Assembly (NCBI RefSeq): GCF_003918875.1
Contig: NW_025767725.1
Span: forward strand, 124,001-188,000
Source of the DNA: Haliotis rubra
Lineage: Eukaryota
Length of the DNA: 64,000 nucleotides
Direction: 5' to 3'
Shown here: one piece after another, positions 7,887 to 61,523 of the stretch
Numbering within the stretch: position 1 is the first letter of the stretch
Layout of the letters: the number at the start of each line of letters is the position of its first letter
Made by a program: the position numbers and the translations under genes
Notes under the pieces: model-generated
Databases searched by the model: none
Seen by the model: only the letters and a program-made list of their open reading frames with translations
What the model was told of the DNA's origin: nothing

Positions 7887-8718
7887 TCAGAAATAGATCT
7901 TCTGAAGAGAGGGGTATCTGTAAGGGATAAGGTGGTGGTGGTAAGGCCGGTGTTCCGATGACACTCGTGTTCTGGCTGGTCCACTGAGGCGGCCTTCACA
8001 CCCATGAACTGAAAGGTGGAGCTCCAGTTTTGCCTGGACAGTGGGGACCGGCGGGAGGGAGGCGAGAGGGTTGAGTTGGTACTCACGAACTGCTGAAAAT
8101 CGTGATAATATAATCATACATACAATTATGTCTCAAGTTAGTAAGATTTATTGTCACATCAATCAATATTTCTGGATATGAATTCAAACTTGGCATATGA
8201 ATTCTTCGAAAATGCATTTGTAAATACACCTATCATCATTGATTGGAAGGTTTGGATTGAATCTTTTGTAAGTTTTGTTGTTGTCTTTTTGAGAACTGCA
8301 TCATTCCTCATAGAATGTTTACGATAAAACTAAACAATATTTTATTCATATATATTACATACATTCCATAAAACGCTGATATATTCTAGTTCTAAATACT
8401 GTTTCTTTCTTGATTCACTATTAACGCAAAGCCAAGAATGATCAAACACGCGGTTTATCTGTTGATTAGAAATATTCCCTGGTCAACAACAAGAAAAATA
8501 TTATTTGTAGGCTGGGTATATTTTTAATAATTGCGTGGTAACATCTATGACAAGACCTACCAGCAGGATCTTTTGCTGTCGGACCAGTGGGGCAAGGTTC
8601 AGCACTGCTCCGGAGTTTTGCAGGTAGTACAAATTTAATATACATGCCTGTACAAATGCCACCAATGATGGCAATCCCCGCGAGATAACCGATCATCACC
8701 GCAACAGCATTGACCTGT
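7887..8718 (-). pseudogene. G1: partial Shisa-like/CYYR1-like gene copy (TM exon 8561-8718, tail exon 7887-8092); no signal-peptide or Cys exon found
   Basis: TM exon has the same 158-nt length and phases as G3 exon 3 (QVNAVAVMIGYLAGIAIIGGICTGMYIKFVLP...), with canonical AG/GT. The tail exon has a net 10-nt deletion relative to G3 that shifts the frame past the ancestral stop (TGA 7996-7998). Confidence 0.7.
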
Positions 8719-8726
8719 CTGTGGAA

Positions 8727-8870
8727 AGTGAGTGAGTTTAGTTTTACGCCGCACTCAGCAATATTCAATCTAAATGGCCACGGTCTGTAAAAAATCGAGT
8801 CTGGACCAGACAATCCAGTGATCAACATCATGAGCATCGATCTACGCCATTGGGAACCGATGACATGTGG
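8727..8870 (-). mobile_element. Retroposon family 2, 5'-truncated, inserted in the G1 exon-3 acceptor tract
   Basis: Family-2 body and tail; absent at the equivalent G3 position (~33555). Confidence 0.85.
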
Positions 8871-8873
8871 CAA

Positions 8874-9069
8874 TAATAATTTTAAAAGCTTCTCAACCAA
8901 ATGGTTTCCTCTCATCGCGGTATTTAATCCTGAATAACTATTTAACCAAAACATATTACTGTCAATATTGATATTTAATGTATTACATCTCTACTGAGCC
9001 CACAAGCTGGTATGTACACATATTCTTCTGTATGCTTGTATTCAACTTATTGGGAACAATTAAAAAAAA
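8874..9069 (+). mobile_element. 3' end of an L1/Tx1-like LINE with A-tail
   Basis: Reverse-complement match to 44340-44500, which continues into zf-RVT-like coding sequence; another copy at ~25540-25838. Confidence 0.6.
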
Positions 9070-9779
9070 GTTACAGCAATCAACCCCTAAGTAAAACTTT
9101 CAACATGTTTTATGGTAAGCATGTGGAGTACATTTCGAAACGTGAGCATCTGTGACAAAAACTGCAAAATCCGATGCAATTCCCTATTTTGAATTGTACC
9201 ATACGTTCCCGAATTGTTTCAAGTGAACAATTGACTACACTTTGCACATGTCCATGAGGGGTGCCATCCGGCGGGGCAGGATATGCTCACCTTTTCGCGA
9301 ACACCTGGTATCATCACTATTTCATAGTGATTCATAAGCACATGCTCTGTCATCGTATTGAATGGTGACAATCACTGAATTGTCTGGTTCAGTCTCGATT
9401 TGTTTACAAACAACATGATACAGCTGTAAAACTCCTGAAGCAAATATATGTTCATGATACAGTCACAGTTGTACAATTTCTTATGTATGTGGAAACGGTT
9501 TTGTTGTTACCGTATGAAAACAAATGTCCGTTTGACTGGTTCATGTGCGATTCCTTAAAGCGAATTTACTGTGTCTTCTCGGATTTCAGTGAACCATTCA
9601 CAACAGACAGAAAGACAGTATTTATTCAGTAAAGAGGCCCTCGCCCATAATACAATCAGAATGACATTGTCTTTAGTGGGTGCGCAAAACAACTTTGCAG
9701 CTCTATGTCCTGGAGTTTATCATTTCTGTACATGGTATAAGTATATGCCAACATTGTATATAACAGCATCCTTTTTGCT

Positions 9780-16115: not shown

Positions 16116-16129
16116 TTTGCTTTGTTCTT

Positions 16130-16984: not shown

Positions 16985-18891
16985 TCAGTACTTTGGGGGA
17001 TAGGCTGCAGGGGCAACCGGGTAGGGTGGGGCTGTTGGGGGTCCCGGGTAGGCGAGGGGAGGGTATTGTGGCATCTGTTGGTTACCGTAGGCGCCCTGAT
17101 CTGCAAATAATCAATTTTATACAGGTTTCAGATCAGACTATTTTTAAATTATATTAATGTTATTGCTTCGTTCATCTTCATTTCAGTCAGGGGATATAAC
17201 CTTAATTTCTGAAACATTTGAATCAAGCTTAATTTGGATTTCTTTATGTGACAGATACAAGTTTGAAGTTCCATGTTCATTATACTTTAATGTTGGTATT
17301 ATGCGGGAGCATTGGATGCCCAGTCGTCTAAGTGAGTGAGAAAGTTAATATTTAACGTCACATCTGCAATATCTCAGCCATATCCTGACGAGAACAATTT
17401 ATACAATAAAAAATGAAAACATTTTGAAGAGTAAAACCTGTCGACGATGGACAGTAAAATACTAGAGTATCCCAGATATGAATATAAAGCTAGCAAGTAA
17501 AACTAAATATTTTAATTAAAGAAACAATACCTTATAAAACACGAGCTATAGATCGCCAACAACTGAAGGCAGATCACCATACTAGGAAACATGGGGACTC
17601 ACATTACTTTTGCTACCTGCATGCACCCTAGTTGGATTTACACCATCCCTTCAGCCGCTGGCAATGGTAGGAATATTAAGCCGAAATTTAAAATAACAAA
17701 AATGCTGCGATTAAAAAGAATGGTTGAGCAAAATTGAATTTGAAGGATTCTGGGACTTACGTACCCTCTCAGGAGGACAATAATTTTACGATACTTTAAC
17801 CCCCTTTGAGGATACAGCCACTAACAATCGCAGGTGCTAATTTATCTTACCATTTATAAAATAGCATTTATCTATTTACAAAACATATAGTTATCCAATA
17901 GTCTTTGATCGTGGAGTCGAATCCCAGTTCGCCTTGCTATGGTTTCCATGTTCCAACACCAAACCTTGCTTGTTGGTCTCACCAAAGAGGTAAAAATTCT
18001 GAAATGGGTATCACTTCATGATTTTCTCACTCACTCACTCACTCATTCACTCACTGGCCCACCCACACACTCACCGACTCACCCACTCACTCAACCCACT
18101 CACTCACTCACTCACTCACCCCACCCACACACACACACTCACTCACTCACTCACTCGCTCACCCACACACCCACTCACCGACTCACCCACTCACTCACTC
18201 ACTCACCCACCCACTCACCGACTCACTCACTCAATCAATCACTCATCCACCCACCCACTCACCGACTCACTCACTCACTTTTAGTTATATGACTGCGTGA
18301 CAACTACACGGGAAAGCAAAGTGGTGTAAAGGTTGGCGACGTTACACGATGTAGATGACACAATGAGTATGGTGCCAGCAAACCAACAAACATTAGCATA
18401 GCAAATCTGGGATTCGAACCCATGGTTTTCTGACGCCAATTTCTACACAACAAATTCCCAGCCTCCATGGAATGTTTAACAAAGGAACATAGATACGTTG
18501 AAAGTATCCATACTTGCGGTGTTCGCAACCACTGCAACGTTAGGTGGTTGAGCCGTATGCATCACATCAGTCCGTCTCTGGATATTTCCTCTGTGAGCTT
18601 GTCGACAGCATGCTCCTATGCAACTCAGGACAACTGCCAGGCATGCGCAGATGATACCAATGCCGGCTCTGAAATGGCAATAATAACGAATAATAAAAAG
18701 TGAGTGAGTGAGTATGGTTTTGCGACGCTTTTAGCAATATTCCAGCAATATCACGTCGAGGGACACCAAACAATGAAAATGACCTTTACACATTGTACCC
18801 ATGCAGGACATCGAACCCAGGTATTCGGTGGGAGTAGAGAACACTTTAACTACTAGGCTACTCAACCGCTGATAGTAAAAATGATGATGAC

Positions 18892-18926
<35 letters not shown>

Positions 18927-21900
18927 GCATAAAAACACGACACGTTCAAAGGGTGTCACATTTACCCCGGGACCGATCAAAGGATGTGTAACCTATCTAA
19001 ATGGAACTTTTTCTCCCCGGGAAGTATAGACAATATGCATATTTAACCCCCTGTCTAATTTAGTCGCTTGACATTAATTTCAAGTGATCTCAGTGGATGT
19101 TTGGAGTGAGTGAGTGAGTTGGGATTTACGTCGCTTTTAGCAATATTCCAGCAATATCACGGCGGGGGACACCAGAAATGGGCTTCACACATTGTACCAA
19201 TGTTGGGAATCGAACCCAGATCTTCGGCGTGACGAGCGAAGGGTTTAACCACTAGGCTACCCCACCACCCCGGATGTTTGCTGTGAGGTGTGACAGCATT
19301 GCATGCATAATCTTCACTGTACACATAAAGTAAATCAAACCTGATATGTTTAGATATAAATGACATCATATATCCTGTTTCACAAGAAACAGTGTGTCAC
19401 TGTCGCATGATGCGTTTCTGTTTTATTGCGATGACCTGTCCGGTCAAGCTTGTTTACACTAGCTACTGATATTGAGGTAGGGCACATTATGCACTAAGTC
19501 TTTAAAGTTAAAGCTTTGTCGCCCAGGAAGTACTTTTCATGTAAAAGAGGCATTTTGGCCACCAAATACCCGTTCTTGCCGATTCGATCCGTGATATACC
19601 AAAAGACGTTTAACGATCATACTGACTGGCTGAAAACTAGTAAACTGTGTAAGAAGTCATCCATGTTAAATTGCAGCACTGTAACCCCAGCATTGAATCC
19701 CTAGCATTGAATTCCCAGCATTGTATCCCCAGCATTGTATCCCCAGCATTGTATTCCCAGCATTGTATCCCCATTGTATTCCAGCATTGTATTCCAAGCA
19801 TTGTATCCCCAGCATTGAATAGACTAGGGCCGATTGTGGATAAAAGTAATGCAAGAGGCATATTTTAGTAGGATTTGGTATCCAGGCTTTTTTATCTATT
19901 TAAAGGGTCTGATCACGAAAACATAGGATACCAAGCTGAAAAAAGTGTTTTTGACCCTCAAAATAGAAAAACAAAATGGCCGCCAAAATCGCTCAAAATA
20001 GTGGTAGGTGTGCATAGTATTTTCGCCTAAGACTGCATCTCTATTTTTTTAATTTTGGAAACTTGACCTTTTATGACATTTAAAGAATGCTGATCATGAA
20101 GAAAAAGGATTCCAAGCTGAAAGTAGTGGTAGGTGTGCACGGTATGTCATCACCTGTGACTGTACATCTATTTTTTAAATATTTTTATACTGACCTTTTT
20201 AGATATTTTAAAGGGTGCTTATCACGAAAAAATAGAATACCAACTGAAATACAAAATTCATTAATTATGAACCTCAAAATTGAAAAAAAACAATATGGCC
20301 GCAAAAATAGCTGATTTTGTGCTGATTATTTCATTGTTACCTTGACGGTATTGAGGCAGTGAGGAAACAAATAGTATTAAAAGTTATACCAATACACAAC
20401 TACATATTTTTTAATCATTTCGGATGAAAACAATAATAATCAATGAAACTTTAACAAACTATTCTCAATCAACCTGAACCATACCAAAGTCATAACAATA
20501 ATGTCACTCACACTTGATTCTCATATACATTAGAATTCCAATTTCCCATGTTATACACAACCATAATATTCAAAGATTCATTGAATAAGCATCTTTGTGA
20601 CTTGCCGCACGTGGCAATACAAGGCAGATTTGATCTCTTGCATTTGCAGCGCATTGTCTGACATGAGCATCTAATAAGTGCAAGACAGGCTTCAGGAATC
20701 GGATCCAAAGACATCAACTGGGGTTGTTGACCTTTGTTTGCTCGTGTCCAACCCATCTCTGTGAATCTGAGAAGTGATGGAATAGCTTCCCAGGCTTTCC
20801 TCAAGATCATGATTTGGTAATGGACACGCTGGAAGTGGTGGCATAGGGCATCACTTGTTTGTGGCATCAACTCAGGGTTAATAATAATTATAATCCCCAG
20901 CACTGAATCCCCAGAATTATATCCCCAGTAATGTACCCCCAGCACTGCATCCCCATCTTTGTATCCCCAGTATAGTATCCCCAGCATCGTATCCCCGATA
21001 TTGTATCCGCAGCATTGTATCCCCGGCATTGAATCCTCAGGATTCTTTACCCAATTGGCGAGTCAATACTGAAGCATACGACACTGACAGATCGTAATAC
21101 AACTGAAATACCCTTTCAAAGGATTGTTAAACACACACGCACGCACATACATACTCACACGCACACACATAAATGTTGATCATTACTTACCCATTACTCA
21201 AACAACAGTAAACAAAATACGCGTCCTCACAACATCCGAAAATACAGGTGATTGACTCGTCCGCCCCGTAGCAAGTTTCAGACAGTGCACCTGAAGAACA
21301 AAGTATAATGAAGTCCATATGTCCTGAAAATCTCCCTCGTTAGTATGTCATGGTGGATCTCTCACTGAATCAAAGTGTACTTTATTACAGGTAAAATCGG
21401 AATATTGACATCCTCATGACTTGTAATCTCTTGCCTTAGTATGTCATGTTGGTTCTCATCACTGAATCAAAGTGTACTTATTACAGGTAAATTCAGAATA
21501 ATGACATCATTATGTCCTGAAATCTCCCTCGTTAATCTCTCTAGTAAGTATTTTATGCTGGATCTTTCACTGAATCAAAGTGTACTTTATCACAGGTCAA
21601 ATCAGAATAATGACATCCTTATGACTTGTAATCTCTCTCGTTAGTATGTCATATTGATTCTCTCACTGAATCAAAGTGTACTTATTACAGGTAAAATCAG
21701 AATATTGACATCCTCATGACTTCTAATCCCTCTAGTAAGTATGTTATGCTGGATCTTTCACTGAATCAAAGAGTACTTTATTACAGGTAAAATCAAAATA
21801 ATGACATCCTCATGACTTGTAATCTCTCTAGTTACAATTCTATGCTGGATCTTTAACTGAATCAAAGTGTACTTTATTACAGATGAAATCAGAATAATGA

Positions 21901-23936: not shown

Positions 23937-24120
23937 AGGGGCGGTGGAGTAGTGTTATGGTTAAAGCGTTCGCTTGTCACGCTGAAGACCCTAGTTCGAT
24001 TCCCCACATGGGTGCACTGTATGAAGCCCATTTCTGGTGTCCACCGCCGTGATGTTGCTAGAATATTGCTAAAACGGCGTAAAACCTCACTCACTCATTC
24101 AATCACTCACTCACTCACTC
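23937..24120 (+). mobile_element. SINE family 1
   Basis: B box and long (CACT)n tail. Confidence 0.8.
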
Positions 24121-38077: not shown

Positions 38078-38120
<43 letters not shown>

Positions 38121-38663
38121 GTTTGTGTGTTTGTCCGAGTGTGTGTTTCAGTGTATCTCTATGAATATGAGTGTGTATGTCAGAGTGTCTCTATCATTGA
38201 GCCTCAATGAATGTATGTAAATGTGTATATTTGTGTCATCTTGTGTCTCTGTGCGTATGTCAGTGTGTCAGTTTATGTATTAGCGTGTGTGTGAAATGCG
38301 TCTGCTCATGATGTCAGTCACTGGATTATTGAGAAACATTTGTCATAGCGCGGAAAGAGTGTTTTTGCCGATAATAAACAAACAAACACGCCATGCAAAT
38401 GAGTTACTTGCGCAATAAAACCACATAATTTCTCGAATAATCTGGATATCATCATTTACCCCAATGTCATGTTATTTCAAACACAGATCAGTCTGTCATA
38501 TTGGTACAGTGAACATCTACACTTTGATCGTTCAAAGGCATGTTTTTTCAGACACGTAATATATACCTAATACGTAATGCTATAGACAGTAGTTCTTACC
38601 CGTAATGTGCAGCAAAACGTAGATGATCACAACAGAGGTTCGACCCACATCTAACAAGCCCAT
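32804..38663 (-). CDS. G3: Shisa-like/CYYR1-like single-pass membrane protein, 147 aa, no PPxY; join(38663-38600, 36623-36509, 33547-33390, 32910-32804)
   Basis: [22 protein letters not shown]|[38 protein letters not shown]|[38 protein letters not shown]...QPA|[35 protein letters not shown]; all GT-AG, phases 1-2-1. Confidence 0.88.
34423..34515. repeat. Degenerate interstitial (CCCTAA)n telomere-like repeat
   Basis: Directly visible. Confidence 0.75.
34530..34860 (+). mobile_element. Penelope-like terminal-repeat insertion: three 74-bp units with minimal hammerhead motifs plus an inverted head
   Basis: CCTGAAGAAG...GAAACGTC at 34591, 34665 and 34739; inverted copy 34530-34584; TSD ACTCGCGTG at 34521-34529 and 34861-34869. 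Confidence 0.7.
35978..36328. mobile_element. SINE family 1 (35978-36122 -) and 5'-truncated family 2 (36190-36328 +)
   Basis: Family sequence; the family-2 copy has TSD CACTTTGAAACCC. Confidence 0.75.
36829..37000 (-). mobile_element. SINE family 1
   Basis: A/B boxes and tail. Confidence 0.75.
37100..38290. repeat. Complex TG-rich satellite in G3 intron 1
   Basis: Recurring TCAGAGTGTGTG / GTCTCTATGAAT with (TG)n. Confidence 0.9.
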
Positions 38664-46100: not shown

Positions 46101-49100
46101 GATAAACCAACATACGTTACCTAGGGCAACACTCTCTGTAGCAAGTGGACTCCTAACAGGATAAACCAACATACGTTACCTAGGGCAACACTCTCTGTAG
46201 CAAGTGGACTCCTAACAGGATAAACCAACATACGTTACCTAGGGCAACACTCTCTGTAGCAAGTGGACTCCTAACAGGATAAACCAACATACGTTACCTA
46301 GGGCAACACTCTCTGTAGCAAGTGGACTCTAACAGGATAAACCAACATACGTTACCTGGCAACACTCTGTAGCAAGTGGAACAGGATAAACCAACATACG
46401 TTACCTAGGGCAACACTCTCTGTAGCAAGTGGACTCCTAACAGGATAAACCAACATACGTTACCTAGGGCAACACTCTCTGTAGCAAGTGGACTCCTAAC
46501 AGGATAAACCAACATACGTTACCTAGGGCAACACTCTCTGTAGCAAGTGGACTCCTAACAGGATAAACCAACATACGTTACCTAGGGCAACACTCTCTGT
46601 AGCAAGTGGACTCCTAACAGGATAAACCAACATACGTTACCTAGGGCAACACTCTCTGTAGCAAGTGGACTCCTAACAGGATAAACCAACATATGTTACC
46701 TAGAGCAACACTCTCTGTAGCAAGTGGACTCCTAACAGGATAAACCAACATACGTTACCTAGGGCAACACTCTCTGTAGCAAGTGGACTCCTAACAGGAT
46801 TAACCAACATACGTTACCTAGGGCAACACTCTCTGTAGCAAGTGGACTCCTAACAGGATAAACCAACATACGTTACCTAGAGCAACACTCTCTGTAGCAA
46901 GTGGACTCCTAACAGGATAAACCAACATACGTTACCTAGGGCAACACTCTCTGTAGCAAGTGGACTCCTAACAGGATAAACCAACATACGTTACCTAGGG
47001 CAACACTCTCTGTAGCAAGTGGACTCCTAACAGGATAAACCAACATATGTTACCTAGTGCAACACTCCCTGTAGCAAGTGGACTCCTAACAGGATAAACC
47101 AACATACGTTACCTAGAGCAACACTCTCTGTAGCAAGTGGACTCCTAACAGGATACACCAACATATTTTACCTAGAGCAACACTCTCTGTAGCAAGATCA
47201 CCGGCAACAGGATAGAACAGCATATGTTACCTGAGCCACTCCGTAGTAAATAGACGCTCAACAGGATAGAACGTCATATCTTAACAAGGCCAACACTTAA
47301 TTTAATGGACCCAAAACAAAAAGGGAAGCCAAATTTTCTCTTGAGCAGAGCTCTCTGTAGTTACTGGAACCCGCAAGAGGAAGCATTTGACTTACCCGCA
47401 AGAGGAAGCATTTGACCTTACCTTGAGCAACACTGTAATTAATTAACAGGACAGAGCATTCAGGTTACCTGTAGCTCAAATAACACTTCCCCAGTAAAAA
47501 AAACAAACAAAAAAGCAACATTAGAAATATGTGTTCCCTTGAGCAAATATCTCTCTTGTAAATGTACCCGCAGCAGGATGTAAACGTCTTACCTTACGTG
47601 GATCATAATACAATTAATAGACCTGAGACAGCACAAAGCGTTATACTTAATACCTTACCAGAAACTACAACGCAATTGATGGATCCGTGACGTAAAAAAC
47701 CCCGTGAAGATCTGGGCCTATATTTTCGAAGCTCTCTTAGCGCTAAGATAGTTGTCAGTTAATGTTAATATTTGGTACTTACGACTATCTTAGGGCTAAG
47801 AGAGCTTCGAAAATATAGGCCCAGGTTTAGATTGATTTCCAGCAACCCATGATTGTCGTAAGAGGCGACAAACGGATCAGGCTCGCTAACTTTACATGTC
47901 ACCTTTATCCCAATTGCGTAGATCGATGCGCATGATGTTGATCGTTGGATTGTCTGGTCTAGACTGGATTATTTACAGACCGCCACCATGTAGCCGGCAT
48001 ATTGCCGAGGGCATTGTTATATTAATCAACAAACAATCCATAACTTCAAAATGATTACCTGGAGGAACACAGAAATACCTACAGCTGCAGCTGTCTAGAA
48101 CATCATACATTACCTGGAACAACACTCTCTGCTGAAAATGGACCCACAGCACGAGGTGGTGCAATAGTATGATGTCCACCCATTGGTAGAGAAGCTCACT
48201 CTGTATCTACAGTGTGCTCCATGGATCTCTGAAACAACAAACATGATGACAAGGGAGAGAGTTTCTTTATGGATGTCAACTTCTTTAGTATTAGGAACAC
48301 AACGTATCGGAGTATATCCTTACTCCTTCATCAGGTGAATGAATGGTATGAGACAGAGAGCACTGTCCACTGTTCATCAACTATCAACACTACTTAACTG
48401 TTAATTGTTGGCTTCTATTCAACACTAATCAACTGTTAAGTGTTGGCGTCCATTCAGCGCTAATTCACTGTTAAGTGCTGGCTTCCATTTGTTCCATTGT
48501 TTTGCCTGCATCTTTGCTGTCTTAGTACTTTTGTTGCTCTTACATGTACATATAAATGCTCTCTGCCTCATACCATAGCTGGGATGAGAGGGAAGGACAT
48601 CTACGATAGGACCAGAACCAGCTCGTAGCGCAAACATAGTAGGGACAATATTTGGTTAATATTTGCGAAAACATCTCCTACATCTAGCGAATTTAATACG
48701 CTACTACCACCTTGTCTGTTTCAATACGAACACTGTCAAACCCGATACTGACATTGTTAATTGAGTTTTAATGGCCCCCTGTGTTAGAGCATGTCCATCT
48801 GGTCACGTTACAAAGTATGAGTAGTCATTAAAGATTAGCTATTGCAATTAATCCTCTGGCGGTGCTAACACTTAATTACAATCAGAACAGAATAACGGTT
48901 CCACTTCTTTATTCTGAGGGTAAAGCTACGAGGGGAAATGCAGAAGCATAATTACGATAAATTACAATGTACGTCTCTTCGTTCACATTTATTTTTCCTG
49001 AGTCGATTGTACAATTGTGACTATATCATGAGCAGATATTTGTTTCAGCAGTATTACAGCCGTATGATGTTGTTTGTAAACAAATCGATTCTGAGCCAGT

Positions 49101-50982
49101 CAATCCAGTGATTGTCACCATGTGACACGATAACAGAGCATGTGTTTATGAATCACTAAGAAATAGTGATGATACCAGGTTTTCGCGAAAAGGTGAGCGT
49201 ATCCTGCCACACCGGTGGCACCCGTCATAAACATGTGCTACGTTTAGTCATTTGTTCACCTGAAATAATTCGGGAACGTGTGGTATAAGTCAAAATAGGG
49301 AATCAGAGAGTTTTAGATGATACGGTCAGTTAAGAAAACACATATGTTCTCCATGTATATATTTTGGGCGTCTTGCTCATTCGTCTAAAAGTTATAAACC
49401 ACTTACGTAACGGAAAACACTTTGCCTCGGTTTGGTCGTTCATAAAGAAACACTACGTAAATCTTCTCCGCAATCAATGAAAAGTCAGCTAACAAAAACG
49501 TTTGTTAGCTGAGCTCGACAAGAATACATAAACACTGCCCTGTACAATAGCCAGCCAACGCACACAATGAACACCCACTGTTACACTCATTCTTGTATGT
49601 GGTATCATACTTGGTATTGTACTGTGTGAATATTTCAATCGTACCGACTTGTCAGAGTCATACTAGCCACAAAAAGAAACTGTCCACTTAGGAAATCAGA
49701 ATATATATTTGTGTGAACTGCATATATACGCAAACACGGATGTAATTAGTGAACTGACCTGAACACTTGCGTATGTGCTACATTCCGTTACATCAATGAT
49801 GCTTTTCCACAAATTTTGTTGCTAAGATTTATCCTTTTCAGGCGCAGTAGAAGAAATATTCGCGCTATTGTTGGCATTGTAATACAACCACGACAACTTG
49901 TCGTTTTCTGAGGCGTTGGGGTAGCCTAGTGGTTGAAGCGTTTACTCGTCACGCCGAAGGTCCGGGTTAGATTCCCCACATGGATACAATGTGTGAAGCC
50001 CATTTCCGCAGTGATATTGCTGGAATATTACTGAAAGGGCGTAAAACCCAACTCACTCACTCTGACGCTTTTAAAGCACGTCTTCGTATGTTATCCATGC
50101 GTATATATGTAGTATTCATATAGAGTAGTACAGAACATACAGGCTGATTACACCCGCACCGCACCGCACCGCACCGCACCGCACCGCACCGCACCGCACC
50201 GCACCCACCGCACCGCCACGCCACGCCACGCCACGCCACGCCACGCCACGACACACCAACACCGCAGCACACCAAACCACAACAAATTTTTTACCATTAG
50301 TGTTTGATGAGATCTGTATACTGGTATATCATTATGCTGTTCTGTTATAAACATATAAATGCAACTAATATCCCTCCGCCTTTACCCCGTTGAAGATTTC
50401 AGGTTCGAACCTTCAACCCCGCAGGTTACCGGGGTCAAATGGTAATGCTCGTTAGACGTTTGATGCATATCATCATCGATGCTCATGATGTCACTCACTG
50501 GTTTGACAGGTTCAAACTCAATATCATACAGACTGATGTCATACAGCTGGAACAGTGCTCAGTGTGGCGTAACGACCATGAAGAAAAATACCCCGAGCAA
50601 TTTGAGAATGTTCTGCTGTAGAAAATCAAAGGATGAAGGAATTGAACCATCCCTCGAGAACAACATGCTCGTCAGCCTCGCATATTTGTTACTTTATCAA
50701 CTCGTGATGACATATTTGATATCAAAAGACACTCAGGTGAGATTCTCTATATACCAGCATAAGACGAAAACCACCACACGGATTTCCCAACTACAGACAC
50801 AGGTGTGGTAGACGAGGTACAGAAAGCAAGGTTGGGGTTGCAAAGTCTTAATCATCAGCACTAAATATTAACTGTGTGATAAAACATCACATAGTAAACG
50901 AATATTACGACAGAAGCTTACCTGTAAAAAAGAAAAGTATAAACACAAGTAGAACCAGCCACATCTTTGTAAGCTGTGCCAT
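43102..50982 (-). CDS. G4: Shisa-like/CYYR1-like single-pass membrane protein, 230 aa, four PPxY; join(50982-50922, 48228-48114, 44252-44065, 43430-43102)
   Basis: MAQLTKMWLVLLVFILFFFTE|IHGAHCRYRVSFSTNGWTSYYCTTSCCGSIFSRECCSS|AISPPYTVGSLAPNYFIAVVVVSVLIVVGFIATLVCVLIKKNGVPGRVIRPQ...TS|GSPPPYS...PPSY...PPAY...PPGY...TLT*; GT-AG, phases 1-2-1. Confidence 0.9.
44340..45470 (-). mobile_element. L1/Tx1-like LINE 3' fragment in G4 intron 2
   Basis: zf-RVT-like CSFCNVSSETVCHVYWEC..FWKKL and EPLWLNNNF in ORFs 44547-44828 and 45218-45457. Confidence 0.75.
45499..47195. repeat. 59-bp minisatellite, ~29 near-identical copies, related to the G4 exon-2 end and donor
   Basis: Unit CATACGTTACCTAGGGCAACACTCTCTGTAGCAAGTGGACTCCTAACAGGATAAACCAA; degenerate units continue to ~48110. 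Confidence 0.97.
47699..48035 (+). mobile_element. Retroposon family 2 with a nested palindromic MITE (47715-47821, CWG flanks, PIF/Harbinger-like)
   Basis: GGCCTATATTTTCGAAGCTCTCTTAGC ... GCTAAGAGAGCTTCGAAAATATAGGCC interrupts the family-2 head. Confidence 0.75.
48294..48339 (-). ncRNA. Degenerate Penelope-type minimal hammerhead ribozyme motif
   Basis: Minus strand TTCAC-CTGATGA-A-GGAGTA-aggata-TACTCC-GATA-CGTT-GTG; the GAAA core reads GATA; downstream AAAGAAGTTGACATCCATA resembles the 34.6-kb repeat tail. Confidence 0.55.
49912..50061 (+). mobile_element. SINE family 1
   Basis: A box and tail. Confidence 0.75.
50151..50265. repeat. (CACCG)n/(CACGC)n microsatellite
   Basis: Directly visible. 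Confidence 0.9.
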
Positions 50983-52279: not shown

Positions 52280-55200
52280 TCAAGCTTTAGGTGTCGTGTC
52301 TGCGGGTGGAACGCTTGGCACACTTGGAACACTTTCTGATGGAAACATGTCACTCGTGGGAAGTGATGTAGCGGCTGATGATGCTGGAGAACCACCAGAT
52401 GCTGGTTCACCAGTCCTGGCGGCTGCTGGCGCTGGAGATGCACCGGAAGTTGGTCCAGAAGGAGAAGACACATCAGTCGTAGCTGTCGATGAAGCTGGTG
52501 GTACACCAGATGTTGTCCCCACAGGCGGAAACGCTACTATGGGGGGTAACTGGGGAGTGTTAGAACTGTAGACTCCTTGAGTACTCATCGTCCGATGTCC
52601 TGATTCTTGAATTGACATCGTGGTATCTCTGGATTGTCCTGTGGCATTCCCTGAGAGTGGTGATACAGTGTAGGCTGGAGGCATAGCATTGTAAGAGGAA
52701 TATGCTGGCGGTGCGGGCACTGAAATACAGATTGCGACAAATCGTTAGATCATCTTTGGGTATGTGTGAACAAATATAATATAGTCCAGTCGTCAAGTGA
52801 GGATGATTGGTTGAATCGTGCATATTGCGTCAAGGGGTGAATCAGTAATTGAGAAATATATGACGTCAATCATTAGTTTTCCAAGATGGCAGCCAACAGG
52901 ACAAAACATATGTTCTGAAATGTACATACCACCACTCTGTTATTGTGTTAGAAATTAAACTTGGTAACGTATATATAACTTCAAAGTCTATGTCTATAGT
53001 GTATTGAAAAAGGAGGCGGGGGTGCAGTCAGTTGTTTTCCAAGATGGCTACAGAAAAACTGAAACAAAGCCAAAGAGAGTGAGTGAGTGAGTGAGTATGG
53101 TTTTAAGCCGCTGTTAGCAATATTCCAGCAATATCTCGGCAGGGGGACACCGAAATGGGTTTCAGATATTGTACCCATGTGGGGAATCGAACCCGGGTCT
53201 TCGGCGTGACGAGCGAACGCTTTAATCACTTGACTACCCCGGCTACATCTCGGCTGCTCAAAAGGCGCTTTGTTTATCCCTCGATCATTACATGTCAATC
53301 TCAACGGCACATCGTATTTTAGTCTCTACTCCCTGGGGATCATACAACTCGTGCAACCACTAGGCACACCAAGTTAGTGTTGCTTTTCCATCCTTACGAG
53401 GTACCCATTCACAGCCGGCTGGACTGCGACACATAGTAACGCAGTCCCAATTTACTGCACGTTGCTGTACCCGTGACTAGGTGTTGCACTATTCATTTGG
53501 ATTCGTGGGTTCCTTTAAGTGCACAGGGTTGTGTACTGTACACTAGGGGTTGTGACAACACTGAAAGAGTCTGCACACAAAGTTGACTCCAAGGTTTTTA
53601 CACCCGGGCACAGGCGGGCTCGATCCCGGCACCTCAAGATCGTTGGATCAATAGCCTGGCGCTTAAAACCCCAGCATTATATGATACTACAGCCACTGAG
53701 ATACTCATTTCTGATTAATTATTGAATGGCTTTATTTCCTCGTGTTCCTCGCCGACAGATAAGATAAAATTATGTATTTCCCAGCGGGAAATGCCACACT
53801 TACACAACGATCGGGTGACTTTGAGAATGAACACCTATCACATGCAGTCAAGCGACCATCACTGAGCATAATCGATTGTAATGCAAGGGTGATAACTATT
53901 GATATGTTTACTTCGTCTGCACAGTGGCAAGGTGTCGGTGAAAGAATTTGGTACCCATACTGTTGAAGAGTGAGTGAGTATGGTTTTACGCCGCTTCTAG
54001 CAATATTCCAGCAATATCACGGCGGGGGACAGTAGGAATGGGCTTCACACATTGTACCCTTGTGGGGAATCGATTCGGGACATCGGCGTGACGAGCGAAC
54101 GCTTTACCCACTAGGCTACCCAACCGCCCTACTGTTGAAAAGGACATTGTAGATCAACAGACGACGATTGTTCAGGAATGATAAAGTCTTTGCCAAAGTG
54201 TCTCTCGGAGTGTATGGCGGGATGTAACCCACAAGCCCGGAGTACGTAATGTCCCGGTACATACTCATATAGGTTACACAAAACCAAATGTTTTCCCATA
54301 GACTTCAATAGCAACGTCATATGTTCTTAAAAGATAACCAGGGCGTTTTAAGTCATTGCATGTACACATATGCACAGCATGGCCTTATGGCTGCAATAAA
54401 AACACAAATTGTGACTAGGTTACCCAATTCCTTTTCTGAGTACAGGTAGCTGAAGACAAAAAAACAGTACCGCACCAAATCTCGCCTACTAGTCCAGTCA
54501 TCCTGGTAAGATTCTGACCTAACCCACCACAAATTGCAACAGAAATGATTTCAACTGTTTTAAGACCCTGAACCATTCCCTTATAACATATAAAAAGTCT
54601 GGGAAAATCTCAGTGGTGGAACAAGGTCAAATTCGACCCTCAAGGTCATAGGGGTCATCTTCGCTTTCGAAATCTTAGATGTTGCAATTTGTGGTGGGTA
54701 TTCACATAAACTGACTGGACTATACTTGAAAATATCTATGCACACATTCAGCGTAAGTCACCGTGTTATATAAGGCAGCATAATATATTTAAAAATGTGG
54801 TCAGTTTTATTTACTGGAGAGATGAAAAACATAATCATCTTACACAATTTCATCCAATCACAGCTGTCATATGCCTCCATCAGAACTGAAGTTTACTTAC
54901 GATACTTGCTTAGGGAGCAAATTTATTTTATTTAGTGTAGTAGATCCTGGCCAGTCTGTGACTATGTGTGTCGATCATGTGATATGGACCATTCATAAAA
55001 CACTAATTTAACTATGCTTGTAATTTTGGAACACGCAGCACAGATCCCTCACAGATCCTATTCTCTCCATTGTAACATCAGGCTCTTGCGTACATATCCG
55101 TTATACTTACTGGTGTAAGGCGGTATAGGGGAGATAACTCTGCCTTTGTATCCTGACTTTGTACATGACTTGATGATGATGATGACGATGCCGCAGCAGC

Positions 55201-56922
55201 ATCCCAGTACCAGCAAGGAAATGATGACGGCTATAGCTATAATCCAGCCATCTACGGTGTCTCTGTAGACGGAAGATGTGTAAGCGTAATCACGATTGGT
55301 TGTGAGTGAGTATGGTTTTACGCCGCGTTTAACGGTATTCCAGATATACCACGGCGGTGGACACCTAAAATGGGCTTCACACATTGCACCTTACCCAAAT
55401 GGGATTCGAACCCGGGTATTTGGCGTGACGAGCGAACACTTTAACCACTAGGCTACCCTGTCGAGCAAACAGCTATTTGTATCATGGACTGTTTGATATG
55501 GGAGAGACGGCCGAAGTGATGTTGATCGTTAAGCAAACTAAACTACACGGTAAAAGAAAGTATACATTTCAAAATTAGATTCGGAAAAATAGCAAACGTT
55601 CTGGAAACGTCATTATAAGCAGTAGCAAAAATATAATGAATTGTTGAGGTCCAAAACACAACGTTGATGTTAGTATCAGACATCACCATCGATTTCCTAT
55701 TTCTTGTTTGGTTCTCACTTAGTCATTAAACATAGGTGTGGTCATTGAGGGGGAATCTGATATCCTAACACGCATAAGGGAGGTTACTCTTCAGACAGCA
55801 CTGTAGCGCCTCAGATAACCTGAATACGAACAGTAAATATTATGTCCCTGCAAATTAACACTATCGACTTCGTTGTTGATTTCACTTCAGAAAACATAGA
55901 TATTGATATCACACTACTTGCGTTCTATATAGGAAATATAATGTCAACCTGTCGAGTATTCATAAGCCTGAAACAACGCCCAATGTTAAAACGACTTTTA
56001 ACGTCAAAGATAGTACGTACATGTAGCAACATTGCTGGCTGTATGAAGATGAGCAGCATTTCTCGGGGCAGGTGAAGGTGACGGTGTTGCTGCTGAAGGT
56101 GCTCTCAAACGCCGTACACTGCACACACAACACGCCTGCAACAGAATACCTTAATCACAAAAGGCATTTAGAACATATAAGTATTTTTTTCAAAAGAGGG
56201 TCAACCAAAGACGATACCTCTATGTCATGTAGTGCACCAACCCTATTGATGGTATCCTCTGGGAGTAATGCTTCATCTACTTTCATGGCGTCTATTGCGG
56301 CGGCGTCCCAACAATAACTTGTTTAAGATCGTCTGCACGTGAGATTCGTAAATCTACATTTTATTCCTTTTCCCCAGCAACCAAAAACATAGAAACTAAC
56401 CTAACGCAGCTCCAAATGTCGGATTATGTGTCCCTCGTGAAACAATGGCATCATTTACAGTTGTTACCTAGTTCTGCAGCACATTCATCATGTAAAAAAG
56501 GCAACAAAAAACTGTTTCTATAGTTTAAGAAATCTCCACATATATATTTATATTCTGTACATATCCTAAGCATGTGTTTATGAATCGCTATCAAATGGTG
56601 AAGGCGATAGCATATATTCCGTATATATCATAAGCTCTTGTTTATGAATCGCTATCAAATGGTGGGGCGATAGCATATATTCCGTATATATCATAAGCAT
56701 TTGTTTATGAAGCACTATTAAATAGATGTAAAGTGTACGGGTATTTCTGTGGCGATATTAAAGTGAACCACGACGAACCCCACATCATGGTAAGGTCAAT
56801 CGGTCAATTACAAACCATCTACACAAATGAAACCATGGCAACGAGATCAGAACCAGATTATACTTACCGTTAACACAGAAAACGCCCCAAATGAAAAAGA
56901 GTAGCAGCACACCCATGGTCAT
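52280..56922 (-). CDS. G5: Shisa-like/CYYR1-like single-pass membrane protein, ~253 aa, two PPxY; join(56922-56868, 56135-56021, 55262-55111, 52719-52280)
   Basis: MTMGVLLLFFIWGVFCVNG|VLCVQCTAFESTFSSNTVTFTCPEKCCSSSYSQQCCYI|DTVDGWIIAIAVIISLLVLGCCCGIVIIIIKSCTKSGYKGRVISPIPPYT|MPAPPAYSSYNAMPPAYT...PKA*; GT-AG, phases 1-2-1; the start may be the second ATG (56916, ACCATGG). Confidence 0.9.
53078..53665 (-). mobile_element. SINE family 1 (53078-53243) adjoining SINE family 4 (53255-53665)
   Basis: Family sequence matches. Confidence 0.75.
53968..54129 (-). mobile_element. SINE family 1
   Basis: TSD TACTGTTGAA on both sides. Confidence 0.85.
55301..55458 (-). mobile_element. SINE family 1, tail ~40 nt upstream of the G5 exon-3 acceptor
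   Basis: A/B boxes and tail. Confidence 0.8.
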
Positions 56923-57261
56923 CTCATTTCTCGAAGTTGTACAGACTAATCTACACCTACCTTGTATTAACGAAGTAATCTTCGTCGTTCACGACACTGT
57001 CTGTCGTGTATGCCGTTATTATGTTTGCAAACATATGCACGTGCCATATCGAAGCACATGTTGAATATGTCTCAGCGGGGTGTACTGTACTTCACGAACA
57101 CCGACATGTTTGCTGAGTAAAGAAGTTACTGTGTGGGCCAAATAAACATACATCTACATGTAAAGGTGGGTTCAATGCTGTGGAACACGATTAAAGTTTA
57201 CTGAGCGACCACCAAGACGGGCTAGACCGTCTACTTGCTGAGCGGTAAGTTGATCTAAAAT

Positions 57262-57509
57262 NNNNNNNNNNNNNNNNNNNNNNNNNNNNNNNNNNNNNNN
57301 NNNNNNNNNNNNNNNNNNNNNNNNNNNNNNNNNNNNNNNNNNNNNNNNNNNNNNNNNNNNNNNNNNNNNNNNNNNNNNNNNNNNNNNNNNNNNNNNNNNN
57401 NNNNNNNNNNNNNNNNNNNNNNNNNNNNNNNNNNNNNNNNNNNNNNNNNNNNNNNNNNNNNNNNNNNNNNNNNNNNNNNNNNNNNNNNNNNNNNNNNNNN
57501 NNNNNNNNN
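57262..57509. other. Assembly gap (248 N)
   Basis: N run. Confidence 1.
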
Positions 57510-58670: not shown

Positions 58671-59061
58671 TCCTAATAACATATCTAGCTTTATCTATCA
58701 TGCAATGCATCTAAGATGTTAAAATTATCAATTTATAATGTACACACAATGTTTTGCCATGCACAATGCAACTTATGTAATTATGGGCCGCTGGCCTACA
58801 CTTCTATAATAAAAGAATTGGACAGCCAAGTTTCGCACATTGCATTGAGAACCAGATAATACAGTTTTGTTCCCTTTAAACTTTTGAGGGTCTGTTGTCC
58901 CTGAAGAGATTGCTATTGTTATACAAGAGACCAAATGCAAGGATACAATATTTCGTTGTGCTCATCGTCATGATTAAAGCATTAACAGTTACATCACACC
59001 AGGGAGAGACAACCCCGCCCTATTCCGCATAACCAAACATATCTTCTTATCGGTTCGGGAG

Positions 59062-59300
59062 ACCAGCGAAGGTCCGAGTTAAAATTGGTCTTCAGCAACC
59101 CATGCTTGTCGTAAGAGGCGACTAACGGGATCAGGTGGTCAGGCTCACTGACTTGGTTGACACATGTCATCGTGAGTCAATTGCGCAGATCGATGCTCAT
59201 GCTGTTGATCACTGGGTTATTTGGAATAGACGCGATTATTTACAGACCGCCGCCATATATATGTAGCTGGCATATTGCTGAGTGCGGCATTAAACAACAA
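59062..59300 (+). mobile_element. Retroposon family 2
   Basis: Family head and tail. Confidence 0.8.
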
Positions 59301-60339
59301 ATGGGGACTTTGGATTGATGATGCTGGTGGTTTAAAGAGCTGTTTAAACAGCAGTACGATTACTGAGTCCAATGGGGTACGACTACTGCTGTCAGTCGCT
59401 CTTCAATGTGCTTCGACGGATGGCCATCGAGGACTGTTCTGTACTCAAGCTTGTCCATGCCTCAATAGAGGTACATGTGATTAGATTTCACGTGACCGGA
59501 AACTAGCGACATGTGCATGTCAATACGTGCATGTGAATGATATAAACCAGTCTTCAATATCATACAGTTATTTTCATCATGCACATATCAGAAGTATTTT
59601 AGGCTCAAGCTTTTTTATAGTAAATTCTGTATGCATGTATTACAGTCATTTTTAAAAAATGCTAACAAAAATCTTTCTGCAGAATCTTTTAGCACTGTCT
59701 CTTAAGAAACGGACGACATTAGAATAAGAATAAGTGTTTCGTATTGACTCAAGTGTCACGTGTCTTAGGACTGGTCAATATAGAGCAATATTGAGTCAGG
59801 AGTTTTATAAGAGTAAATCAGTTTGTTTCATCTTGATCGGGATCAGGATTTGCCATGTAAACTCCATAATTCCTCGAAGCTTCAATGTGCTCTAATAATT
59901 AACGACAAAAGGTAAATTCCAAAACGGATATATTTTAATGCATTTGTAAAGTAAACTATGCAGTATATTACATATCATATATATGCAAAGGTTGAGGTAA
60001 AAGATACTTCACTTTAGGTGTCTCGGGGTACAATGCTTCAGCTATTTCAACATCAGATTCAAATAGTTGATATGATGTTATTCAATGTAGATTCAATGAT
60101 TCAATTATGTTAATAAGACACAAAACAAGAGTAAAATTATATGCCAATCTGCTTCACTACAGTTCAAAGTGGCGTTGAACTCAGCTGTATCATATATGTG
60201 GGCAGAATCGGTCACTTGATACCATGGCCAGCTCAATTTGAGTTCAGAACATATAAAGCATGGGTTTGATGCAGAACTGGCGCCGGTTGTATGACAAACG
60301 CTCATGTCGTGTTAAAGGTTTAATGAACAATATCAGAAT

Positions 60340-60717
60340 GGAATAGATAGAGGATATTAAATGAGTGCCATGTCATACTATGTTTACGACACTAGTGCCT
60401 AAATGTTGGTATTTCCCGAGCGAGAGCGAGGGATATACCGTTATTTAGGCACGAGTGTCGTAAACATAGTGTGATATGGGCACGAATATAATATTCTGTT
60501 TATTACCGAAGTCGTCAAATTGAGAAAAATAAACCCAAATCTACTTTCAAACACAGGCTGGCTACCCGCCGTCGCCGCTTGTAGAACGCAACGTCACAGA
60601 AAAACGTGATGTCACAGCCTTGTTCATGACGTCACGTCACCACGACAAAGTGATATTTTGCCCTAGGGCATCGTATGAAAAATATGAACCCCGATATGTT
60701 TCGCCCTCGTAGGTAAT
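60340..60717. mobile_element. Non-autonomous element with a long internal palindrome (possibly Crypton-like)
   Basis: ACTATGTTTACGACACTAGTGCCTAAAT...ATTTAGGCACGAGTGTCGTAAACATAGT hairpin; class is a guess. Confidence 0.45.
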
Positions 60718-60811
60718 ACACACAAATAGTATCTATAAGGTTCATCGAGAGATAAAGTTGTATTTAATACAACTATGCACCGCTGATATTACATCTTCTC
60801 TCAAAACTAGG

Positions 60812-61523
60812 TTATTTACGGAAAGTAGTGGCACTAGGTGCGACAGGAGCAGGAACAGAATCAGGGAGAGGAGATTGAAACGGTCCAAACGGATCAGGAT
60901 CCGAAGTGTCTTCCTGGGGTGGATCAGGAGGCTTCTCAGATGATGTTTGATCAGGATTTGAATCCCCAGCATTATCATCTTGGAGATTTTTCGCTGCATC
61001 CTCTTCCTCTGATATGATTGCCTTTGTTGTGGATGTATCTTCAGGCGCATCCTGTCCACCAGTTGTAGCTTGACTTTCAGATGGATCTTGTCCAAGAGGA
61101 AGGGGTTGACCTTGTCCTGGAGGTGGGGCTTGACCGTCAGGTGGAGCTTGTTCTGAAGGCGGGCCTGGGGCTGTCGGAGCTTGTACTGGAGGCGGGACAG
61201 GACCAGGAGGTGGGGCTTGACTACCATAAGGAGGCTGATATCCAGGGCTCTGTGATGGATACGGACCTATCCTCGCAGTATTTGGGTATGGTGTTGGCCC
61301 CATGTTGTAACCAGGGGCTCCGGAAGTGGGTCCGTAATACTGAGCTGTATTTGGATACGGTGTGGGGCCAAACTTGTAAGGAGCTGGGCCGGGGGCTGAA
61401 TAAGGAGCAGGGCCAGGGGCTGAATAAGGAGCCATGCCGGGATAAGGAGATGCGTTTGGGTATGCGGAATACGAAGGGGGTGTCTCCCCTTGGTGTGGAG
61501 GTCGTCCGCTCATCTGATCAGAT
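60812..61523 (-). CDS. G6: terminal proline/tyrosine-rich tail exon of a further cluster member (upstream exons not found in the window)
   Basis: Open frame of ~236 codons with PPSY, repeated APY/GPAPY/GPTPY and an acidic C-terminus; acceptor TTGCTTCCAG at 61524-61525; same strand and style as the G2-G5 last exons, but apparent phase 2 rather than 1. Confidence 0.75.

What the first reader, a model, noticed from the sequence alone, without database searches (positions are those of the whole stretch)
7887..61523. Hidden tandem cluster of highly diversified Shisa-like/CYYR1-like six-cysteine membrane adaptors
Seen: four complete genes plus two partial ones, all on the minus strand, with one exon per module and intron phases 1-2-1. 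The ectodomain exon is 115 nt in G3, G4 and G5 and 100 nt in G2. It keeps the C-x(n)-C-x(2-3)-CC-x(7)-CC scaffold while nearly all other residues differ. Known: this architecture with juxtamembrane Cys and PPxY motifs defines Shisa-like proteins (CYYR1, WBP1, VOPP1, TMEM92), proposed adaptors for NEDD4-family WW-HECT ligases. Inference: a lineage-expanded repertoire of small variable ectodomains coupled to ubiquitin-ligase-recruiting tails, which may act in recognition, immunity or receptor turnover.
Basis: partly seen in the sequence, partly recalled or inferred. Interest (0 to 1): 0.85.

Follow-up and report, generated by a model that had tools for sequence, protein, structure and literature searches.

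The report
Abalone cluster of Shisa-like membrane genes
This stretch of abalone DNA carries four intact neighbouring genes, plus one truncated copy, for small single-pass membrane proteins with the six-cysteine head and proline/tyrosine tail typical of Shisa-like adaptors; they are real and conserved between abalone species, but are an ordinary lineage-specific branch of a known protein kind, not a fast-diversifying recognition repertoire.

Summary
The core observation holds. Four minus-strand genes (G5, G4, G3, G2) each have four exons: signal peptide, six-Cys ectodomain (115/115/115/100 nt), TM, tail. All introns are GT-AG with phases 1-2-1. The motif C-x(8-15)-C-x(2-3)-CC-x7-CC occurs 4 times against 0.015 expected.

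G1 is a truncated copy of the 3' half of G3, about 80% identical, with a 10-nt deletion and no ecto exon. G6 is not shown to belong. It is a stand-alone Pro/Tyr-rich ORF, annotated as a single-exon gene in H. cracherodii, and its splice phase does not fit. The N gap (57262-57509) is intergenic, 340 nt upstream of the G5 ATG.

G6-G5-G4 have collinear one-to-one orthologues in H. cracherodii. Cross-species conservation there coincides with the predicted exons. dN/dS of the ecto exon is 0.11 (G5) and 0.37 (G4).

Shisa_N is the only Pfam family hit by the Cys domain of abalone relatives, always below threshold (12-21.6 bits against 22). No relative outside Haliotis was detected and no RNA data were available.

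Verdict: new members of a known kind (Shisa-like/STMC6). Ligase recruitment through PPxY is inferred, and the diversifying or immune reading is not supported.

The parts
52280..56922 (-). G5, complete gene, 253 aa. Exons 56922-56868 (signal peptide), 56135-56021 (six-Cys ecto, 115 nt), 55262-55111 (TM + juxtamembrane), 52719-52280 (Pro/Ser/Thr-rich tail, 2 PPAY).
   Evidence: Model. Orthologue P0001 (H. cracherodii, 245 aa) reproduces all three junctions. Cross-species conserved blocks coincide with the exons. Ecto exon omega 0.11.
43102..50982 (-). G4, complete gene, 230 aa. Exons 50982-50922, 48228-48114 (115 nt ecto), 44252-44065 (TM), 43430-43102 (tail, 4 PPxY).
   Evidence: Model. Orthologous exons in L001 at 19623-19683, 23658-23772, 25300-25487 and 25993 onwards, with the same lengths and phases. 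Conserved blocks. Omega 0.24-0.37.
32804..38663 (-). G3, complete gene model, 147 aa. Exons 38663-38600, 36623-36509 (115 nt ecto), 33547-33390 (TM), 32910-32804 (short tail, no canonical PPxY).
   Evidence: GT-AG sites, phases 1-2-1, open frame. There is no orthologue or RNA evidence; support comes only from the parallel structure with G4/G5 and from the duplicated 3' half in G1.
16985..23372 (-). G2, complete gene model, 140 aa. Exons 23372-23321, 21290-21191 (100 nt ecto), 18668-18514 (TM with 5 Cys), 17100-16985 (tail ending PPKY).
   Evidence: Exon 1 is the least certain exon: it is the best signal-peptide-like ORF with a phase-1 donor. There is no orthologue or RNA evidence.
7887..8718 (-). 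G1, truncated paralogue of G3. TM exon 8718-8561 and tail exon 8092-7887 only. A 10-nt deletion shifts the tail frame relative to G3. No signal-peptide or ecto exon. Probably a pseudogene.
   Evidence: Collinear ~80% identity between 31004-34312 and 7224-9603 plus 11741-11953. The TM exon (78.5% identical) is not better conserved than the intron (85%). Coordinates. No Cys-motif ORF in 8.7-17 kb.
60812..61523 (-). G6, a neighbouring Pro/Tyr-rich ORF (ATG at 61513, 233 aa, one PPSY). It is conserved, but not shown to belong to the family.
   Evidence: Orthologue L001:1308-2000 is annotated as a single-exon 230-aa gene. Omega 0.36. No hit in 5.8 billion proteins, no Pfam hit, and no significant similarity to the family tails.
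57262..57509 (.). Assembly gap (N), intergenic between G6 and G5, 340 nt upstream of the G5 start codon.
   Evidence: Not filled and not looked up.
45469..47196 (-). 59-bp minisatellite (~29 copies) in G4 intron 2, derived from the 3' end of the ecto exon plus its splice donor. This is context, and is the subject of another note.
   Evidence: Also present in H. cracherodii.

Best explanation
The window holds part of a tandem cluster of abalone (Haliotis) genes for small type-I single-pass membrane proteins of the Shisa-like (STMC6) kind. There are four intact paralogues (G5, G4, G3, G2) and one truncated recent duplicate (G1). Each module sits in its own exon: a signal peptide, a ~35-aa ectodomain held by six Cys (C*C*CC*CC, presumably three disulfides), a TM helix followed by a basic juxtamembrane patch, and a disordered Pro/Tyr-rich cytoplasmic tail. 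The paralogues are old and individually conserved, since G5 and G4 have collinear orthologues under purifying selection in a second abalone species. The likely mechanism is inferred, not shown. The ecto/TM part would bind a partner membrane protein in the secretory or endosomal pathway, and the PPxY motifs of G5, G4 and G2 would dock the WW domains of NEDD4-family HECT ligases, steering ubiquitination, sorting or turnover of the partner or of the ligase, as shown for CYYR1 and WBP1L. G3, which has no PPxY, would act without ligase recruitment or as a modulator.
For: Shown here:
- The motif occurs four times against 0.015 expected, all on one strand.
- Exon architecture, GT-AG sites and phases 1-2-1 are identical in the four genes.
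- Each model has a hydrophobic N-terminus and a single TM segment followed by K/R-rich residues. A low-confidence AlphaFold2 model of the orthologue shows a signal helix, a beta hairpin and a TM helix.
- The NCBI protein P0001 from H. cracherodii matches the G5 model across all three exon junctions at 218 bits.
- The order G6-G5-G4 is collinear in L001, and cross-species conserved blocks coincide with the predicted exons while the one intron aligned (G5 intron 2) hardly aligns.
- Omega is 0.11 (G5 ecto), 0.37 (G4 ecto), 0.24 (G4 TM) and 0.37 (G4 tail), all significantly below 1.
- Both PPxY motifs of G5 and three of the four in G4 are kept in the orthologue although the flanks change.
- Link to Shisa: Shisa_N PF13908 is the only Pfam hit for the Cys domain of P0001 (E 0.081), P0002 (E 0.0014; 0.00024 for residues 1-75), P0004 (E 0.00033) and the ecto exon of the G4 orthologue (E 0.19). 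P0002 is itself the only true relative of the G5 orthologue found among 1.84 billion representatives (E 4.4e-4).

From the literature: C*C*CC*CC is the Shisa-like hallmark and CYYR1 carries Cys in its TM helix (PMC5578492). CYYR1 and WBP1L recruit WWP1/2, ITCH and NEDD4L through PPxY (PMC11399591).
Against: - No Pfam hit reaches the gathering score (best 21.6 bits against 22). The window's own ecto exons give no hit when scanned alone.
- No hit to CYYR1, WBP-1 or other STMC6 Pfam models appeared at E<=10.
- No relative outside Haliotis was found, so homology to vertebrate Shisa-like proteins rests on a short Cys pattern that could be convergent.
- No RNA run holds the locus. The two runs that do are genomic DNA, so expression and splice junctions of G2 and G3 are unverified.
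- G3 has no PPxY motif.
- Tails rich in Pro and Tyr will produce some PPxY by composition alone.
- The ectodomain of the structural model has pLDDT of only about 60.
Confidence: 0.72

Rival explanations
1. A Haliotis-specific family of small Cys-rich membrane proteins that only converges on the Shisa-like pattern. It would work in another way, for example as cell-surface ligands, co-receptors or adhesion tags, with the Pro-rich tail binding SH3, WW or EVH1 proteins unrelated to HECT ligases.
For: All Pfam matches are below threshold. phmmer over 1.84 billion representatives found relatives only in Haliotis. There is no PDB relative. G3 and the P0002 type lack PPxY.
Against: Shisa_N is the sole family hit, four independent times out of 24,736 models, and always over the six-Cys segment. 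The whole architecture (signal peptide, C*C*CC*CC, TM with Cys, PY tail) matches the published definition. PPxY motifs are conserved between species.
Confidence: 0.15
2. One reading: a lineage-expanded, rapidly diversifying repertoire of variable ectodomains used for recognition or immunity.
For: Paralogous ectodomains share only the six Cys (24-34% identity). The genes are tandemly arrayed. At least one more member lies upstream (G7). An earlier unchecked note (s1-349433) reports another array of five elsewhere in the genome. A recent partial duplication (G1) shows that the cluster is still turning over.
Against: The two genes that could be tested have one-to-one orthologues in conserved order. 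The ecto exon is the best conserved part of G5 (79% aa identity, omega 0.11) and is under purifying selection in G4 (omega 0.37). No exon shows omega significantly above 1. Only the signal-peptide exons reach about 1-1.8, on 18-20 codons, and this is not significant.
Confidence: 0.1
3. The models are chance ORFs or decayed pseudogenes without function.
For: There is no RNA evidence. G1 is truncated and frameshifted. G2 and G3 have no orthologue evidence.
Against: Motif enrichment. Conserved open frames, splice sites and omega below 1 across two species for G5 and G4. An NCBI gene model exists for the G5 orthologue.
Confidence: 0.03

Closest known systems
Shisa family / Pfam Shisa_N (PF13908), within the Shisa-like STMC6 superfamily of Pei & Grishin 2012
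   Same: Signal peptide, six-Cys C*C*CC*CC ectodomain, single TM helix and Pro-rich cytoplasmic tail with PY motifs. Shisa_N is the only Pfam model that the Cys domain of the abalone relatives touches (12.3-21.6 bits).
   Different: All scores are below the gathering score of 22. The proteins are short (140-253 aa) and no relative was detected outside Haliotis. Vertebrate Shisa proteins act on Frizzled, FGFR or AMPA receptors, and nothing is known about partners here.
[quoted passage not shown]
   Same: Small size (CYYR1's PPxY motifs lie at residues 113-148). Cys-rich head, Cys residues inside the TM helix (GCCCG in G5; several in G2 and G3) and multiple PPxY in the tail. CYYR1 binds WWP1/WWP2/ITCH through PPxY at late endosomes (PMC11399591).
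   Different: No match to the Pfam CYYR1 model at E<=10. The tails are unrelated in sequence. G3 has no PPxY.
WBP1 / WBP1L (OPAL1) / VOPP1 / TMEM92
   Same: Listed in PMC11399591 as STMC6 family members with a TM domain and multiple PPxY motifs. WBP1L is an adaptor of NEDD4-family ligases for CXCR4 (PMC6991692; PMC11399591).
   Different: No Pfam match here. The resemblance is of architecture only.

Membership tests
Shisa-like / STMC6 superfamily | N-terminal signal peptide (type-I topology) | tested here: met
   Hydrophobic exon-1 ORFs with phase-1 donors in all four genes, and K/R-rich residues after the TM segment. This is a heuristic only; no SignalP was available. The G2 exon 1 is the least certain.
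Shisa-like / STMC6 superfamily | Six ectodomain Cys in the C*C*CC*CC arrangement | tested here: met
   4 of 4 genes, plus P0001, P0002, P0004 and the G4 orthologue. The six Cys are the only invariant columns. Chance expectation is 0.015 per window. The pattern definition is from PMC5578492.
Shisa-like / STMC6 superfamily | Single TM helix directly after the Cys domain | tested here: met
   Kyte-Doolittle maxima of 2.5-3.2 in exon 3 of each gene. Helix 60-92 in the AlphaFold2 model of P0001.
Shisa-like / STMC6 superfamily | Pro-rich cytoplasmic region with PY (PPxY) motifs | tested here: inconclusive
   G5 has 2, G4 has 4, G2 has 1 and G3 has 0. Both G5 motifs and 3 of 4 G4 motifs are conserved in H. 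cracherodii. The paralogue P0002 has a short tail without PY.
Shisa family (Pfam PF13908 Shisa_N) | Profile match at or above the curated gathering score (22 bits) | tested here: inconclusive
Scores: P0004 21.1 bits; P0002 19.1 bits (21.6 for residues 1-75); P0001:1-110 13.5 bits; G4-orthologue ecto exon 12.3 bits. In each case it is the only family hit for the Cys domain. The window's ecto exons alone give no hit at E<=10.
CYYR1 (Pfam PF10873) | Profile match to the CYYR1 model | tested here: not met
   No hit at E<=10 for P0001, full length or residues 1-110, or for P0002/P0004.
NEDD4-family ligase adaptors (functional class) | PPxY-dependent binding of WW domains of NEDD4/WWP/ITCH-type ligases | not testable with these tools
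   Analogy with CYYR1 and WBP1L only (PMC11399591).

The most novel reading that the evidence does not exclude
Abalones carry a genus-specific, clustered radiation of Shisa-like adaptors, with this array, G7 upstream, P0002 40 Mb away and a reported second array. Each old paralogue would have a private ectodomain dedicated to a different membrane partner. The neighbouring TM-less PY-rich gene G6 would be a soluble competitor or regulator for the same WW-domain ligases. Together they would form a modular receptor-turnover toolkit not described in molluscs.
Probability: 0.15. Interest if true: 0.5.

Novelty: new member of a known kind. Interest (0 to 1): 0.3.

Why it matters
The work supplies gene models for small multi-exon membrane proteins. 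G5 and G6 had no protein from this genome in the searched collection, and the G5 orthologue is listed only as an 'uncharacterized protein' in H. cracherodii. It places these proteins with the Shisa-like PY-motif adaptors, a class that controls receptor trafficking and NEDD4-ligase activity in vertebrates. For mollusc biology this gives candidate regulators of receptor turnover and a clean example of one-module-per-exon architecture. It does not open a new kind of system, and the more exciting immune-diversification idea is not borne out.

Tried and rejected
- Exon-wise Pfam scans of the window's ecto and TM exons gave no Shisa-like hit, only weak TM-type noise.
- The search for homologous proteins with the G6 ORF gave nothing. 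With the G5 tail it returned only P0001. With P0001 residues 1-110 it returned only itself.
- An exhaustive phmmer search of P0001:1-126 over 1.84 billion representatives returned only P0002 and one spurious archaeal repeat protein, P0003. No link outside Haliotis was found.
- A PDB profile search gave only chance-level hits.
- RNA evidence: no RNA run holds the locus. The two holders are genomic DNA 3-7% different from the window, so no junction test was possible.
- The AlphaFold2 ectodomain had pLDDT of about 60, too low for a fold search, so none was run.
- G6 as a family tail was rejected on phase, on the orthologue's annotation and on lack of similarity.
- G1 as a complete gene was rejected because the duplication breakpoint lies in intron 2.
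- PPPY hits inside the SINE-like repeat, found on both strands, were discarded as unrelated.
- The joined models were used only inside local scripts for translation, alignment, a local tblastn against L001 and dN/dS.
- The Pei & Grishin 2012 paper itself is not held. Its definition is cited through PMC5578492.
Full report
**What is in the sequence**

The window has about 40% GC and one N run at 57262-57509. A six-frame scan for C-x(2-15)-C-x(2-3)-CC-x(5-9)-CC finds exactly four matches, all on the minus strand, at 56026-56118, 48119-48211, 36526-36606 and 21202-21273. Two hundred dinucleotide-preserving shuffles give a mean of 0.015 matches and never more than one.

Each match sits in an exon bounded by a pyrimidine-rich AG acceptor and a GT donor.

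**Gene models**

Downstream of each ecto exon lies an exon with a single strongly hydrophobic segment followed by K/R-rich residues. A further exon encodes a Pro/Tyr-rich tail. Upstream lies a short ATG exon with a hydrophobic core and a phase-1 donor.

Joining these locally gives four complete open models with canonical GT-AG introns and phases 1-2-1:

| Gene | Exon 1 | Exon 2 (ecto) | Exon 3 (TM) | Exon 4 (tail) | Length |
|---|---|---|---|---|---|
| G5 | 56922-56868 | 56135-56021 | 55262-55111 | 52719-52280 | 253 aa |
| G4 | 50982-50922 | 48228-48114 | 44252-44065 | 43430-43102 | 230 aa |
| G3 | 38663-38600 | 36623-36509 | 33547-33390 | 32910-32804 | 147 aa |
| G2 | 23372-23321 | 21290-21191 | 18668-18514 | 17100-16985 | 140 aa |

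Canonical PPxY motifs number 2 in G5, 4 in G4, 0 in G3 and 1 in G2. Among the ectodomains only the six Cys are invariant, and pairwise identity is 24-34%.

**The two 'partial' genes**

G1 is real but truncated.
- The region 31004-34312 (G3 downstream sequence, tail exon, TM exon and part of intron 2) is collinear at about 80% identity with 7224-9603 plus 11741-11953.
- G1 therefore has only a TM exon (8718-8561) and a tail exon (8092-7887).
- A 10-nt deletion shifts the tail frame relative to G3.
- The TM exon (78.5% identical) is no better conserved than the intron (85%).
- No Cys-motif exon lies upstream. I read G1 as a recent partial duplicate, probably a pseudogene.

G6 (61523-60812) is a different matter.
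- Its ORF starts at a conserved ATG (61513), 10 nt after a conserved acceptor.
- Read in phase 1, as the family's tail exons are, it hits a stop in both species.
- The H. cracherodii orthologue is annotated as a single-exon 230-aa gene.
- The 7.5 kb upstream of that orthologue contains no ecto or TM exon.
- After composition correction it has no significant similarity to any family tail.
- It is conserved (omega 0.36), so it is a real neighbouring gene for a PY-containing Pro-rich protein. It is not shown to be a family member.

**Assembly gap**

The gap at 57262-57509 lies between the G6 stop (60812) and the G5 ATG (56922), so no coding model crosses it. Conserved blocks on both sides (58096-57703 and 57181-56800) keep the order and orientation of H. 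cracherodii. The spacing differs, however: 522 nt here including the Ns, against 2.6 kb there. Continuity is plausible but the true length is unknown.

**Evidence from other genomes**

Earlier notes of this scan call the genome Haliotis rubra. I did not verify the species, but my only database relatives are Haliotis proteins.

The G5 tail retrieved one protein, P0001, an 'uncharacterized protein' of H. cracherodii of 245 aa. Its sequence matches my G5 model across all three exon junctions at 218 bits. This independently supports the splice model.

Its locus (L001, L002) shows the same gene order: the G6 orthologue, then the G5 orthologue, then a 229-aa G4 orthologue. A further member, G7, lies upstream. 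G7 has the TM exon motif 'GRVIHPQPQT' and a tail with PPPY.

BLASTN between the two species finds conserved blocks that coincide with the predicted exons, for example 56141-56008, 55282-55103, 48236-48097 and 44314-44057. By contrast, G5 intron 2 is essentially unalignable.

Nei-Gojobori estimates, with overall dS of about 0.48, are as follows (Fisher tests):

| Gene | Ecto exon | TM exon | Tail exon |
|---|---|---|---|
| G5 | 0.11 (p=2e-5) | 0.68 | 0.65 |
| G4 | 0.37 (p=0.03) | 0.24 | 0.37 |

Both PPxY motifs of G5 and three of the four in G4 are retained in the orthologues. So G5 and G4 are functional genes with one-to-one orthologues, and their ectodomains are constrained, not diversifying.

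G2 and G3 could not be checked this way. The downstream H. cracherodii DNA could only be reached through an exact spliced protein, which has no reference.

**Expression**

No RNA run holds the locus. The two runs that do are genomic DNA that differs from the window by 3-7%, with contigs running through introns and no splice joints. Expression is therefore untested.

**What family**

The literature gives C*C*CC*CC after a signal peptide, followed by a TM helix and PY motifs, as the hallmark of Shisa-like (STMC6) proteins. It also notes Cys residues inside the TM helix of CYYR1 (PMC5578492). All of these are present here: G5 has GCCCG in its TM helix, and G2 and G3 have several Cys there.

At the sequence level the picture is weaker.
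- The window's exons alone give no Pfam hit.
- P0001:1-110 hits only Shisa_N, at E 0.081 and 13.5 bits.
- The ecto exon of the G4 orthologue hits only Shisa_N, at 12.3 bits.
- P0002 and P0004 are 112-aa proteins of H. cracherodii and H. rufescens. P0002 is encoded 40 Mb away on the same H. cracherodii chromosome. It is the only true relative of P0001 among 1.84 billion representatives (E 4.4e-4).
- P0002 and P0004 hit only Shisa_N, at 19.1-21.6 bits against a gathering score of 22.

This is a consistent but sub-threshold link. No CYYR1 or WBP-1 model is hit, there is no PDB relative, and nothing was found outside Haliotis. The AlphaFold2 model of P0001:1-110 shows a signal helix, a beta hairpin and a TM helix, but the ectodomain pLDDT is only about 60. 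I did not run a fold search on it.

**Mechanism**

Shown here: the architecture, the conservation, and the retention of PY motifs between species.

Inferred: type-I insertion, three disulfides in the ectodomain, and PPxY-dependent docking of NEDD4-family WW-HECT ligases. That docking would steer ubiquitination and sorting of a bound membrane partner or of the ligase. It has been demonstrated for CYYR1 (WWP1/2, ITCH; late endosomes) and reported for WBP1L (CXCR4) (PMC11399591; PMC6991692). G3 lacks PPxY and would have to work differently.

**Novelty and score**

These are lineage-specific new members of a known kind. G5 and G6 gave no protein from this genome in the collection, and the G5 orthologue is listed as 'uncharacterized' in a sister species.

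The inference of a diversifying recognition repertoire is not supported for the two genes that could be tested. An earlier unchecked note (s1-349433) reports a similar array of five elsewhere in the genome, so the family is larger than this window.

Interest: 0.3.

They were used only in local scripts. The N gap was not filled.

Noticed in passing
window 45469-47196 (G4 intron 2); L001 ~23743-25174: A 59-bp minisatellite of about 29 copies whose unit is a copy of the 3' end of the G4 ecto exon plus its GT donor. The array is also present in H. cracherodii, so it predates the species split.
   Followed up: partly
window ~55325-55297, ~18725-18700, ~8765-8727 (minus strand); many other copies, e.g. 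27284-27505, 36185-36370, 32045-32293: A SINE-like repeat (translates as ..[18 protein letters not shown]..) ends 20-70 nt upstream of the TM-exon acceptor in G5, G2 and G1, in the same orientation but not in G3. It may be chance given its abundance. Its PPPY is a translation artefact and can mislead motif scans.
   Followed up: no
window 60812-61523 (-); L001:1308-2000: G6 is a conserved (omega 0.36) stand-alone Pro/Tyr-rich protein of about 233 aa, with one PPSY here and two PPPY in H. cracherodii. It has no TM segment, no Pfam hit and no database relative outside the H. cracherodii orthologue. A conserved splice acceptor lies 10 nt before the ATG.
   Followed up: partly
L001 16850-17235: The H. 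cracherodii G5 orthologue carries 87-nt (29-aa) tandem repeats in its tail that are absent from the window. The NCBI model (P0001) omits parts of this tail exon (residues around PPPYT/NTQGVY and within the repeats), so it is 245 aa against 301 aa when read straight through.
   Followed up: partly
L002 1470-2510; L003 10001-13600: Further family members lie outside the window. G7 (222 aa) is upstream of G6 in H. cracherodii. P0002 and P0004 (112 aa, three exons, short tail without PY) belong to H. cracherodii and H. rufescens, and P0002 is encoded 40 Mb away on the same H. cracherodii chromosome.
   Followed up: partly
window 347-2462 (+), 41238-42113 (-): LINE reverse-transcriptase-like ORF fragments and a Tc1/mariner-like transposase fragment lie in the intergenic DNA of the cluster. 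This reading is from the translations and was not searched.
   Followed up: no
window 52000-57200: The only public runs holding this stretch are genomic and differ from the window by 3% (tail-exon region) to 7% (55422-56597). This could be a divergent haplotype, a different population or a sister taxon.
   Followed up: no
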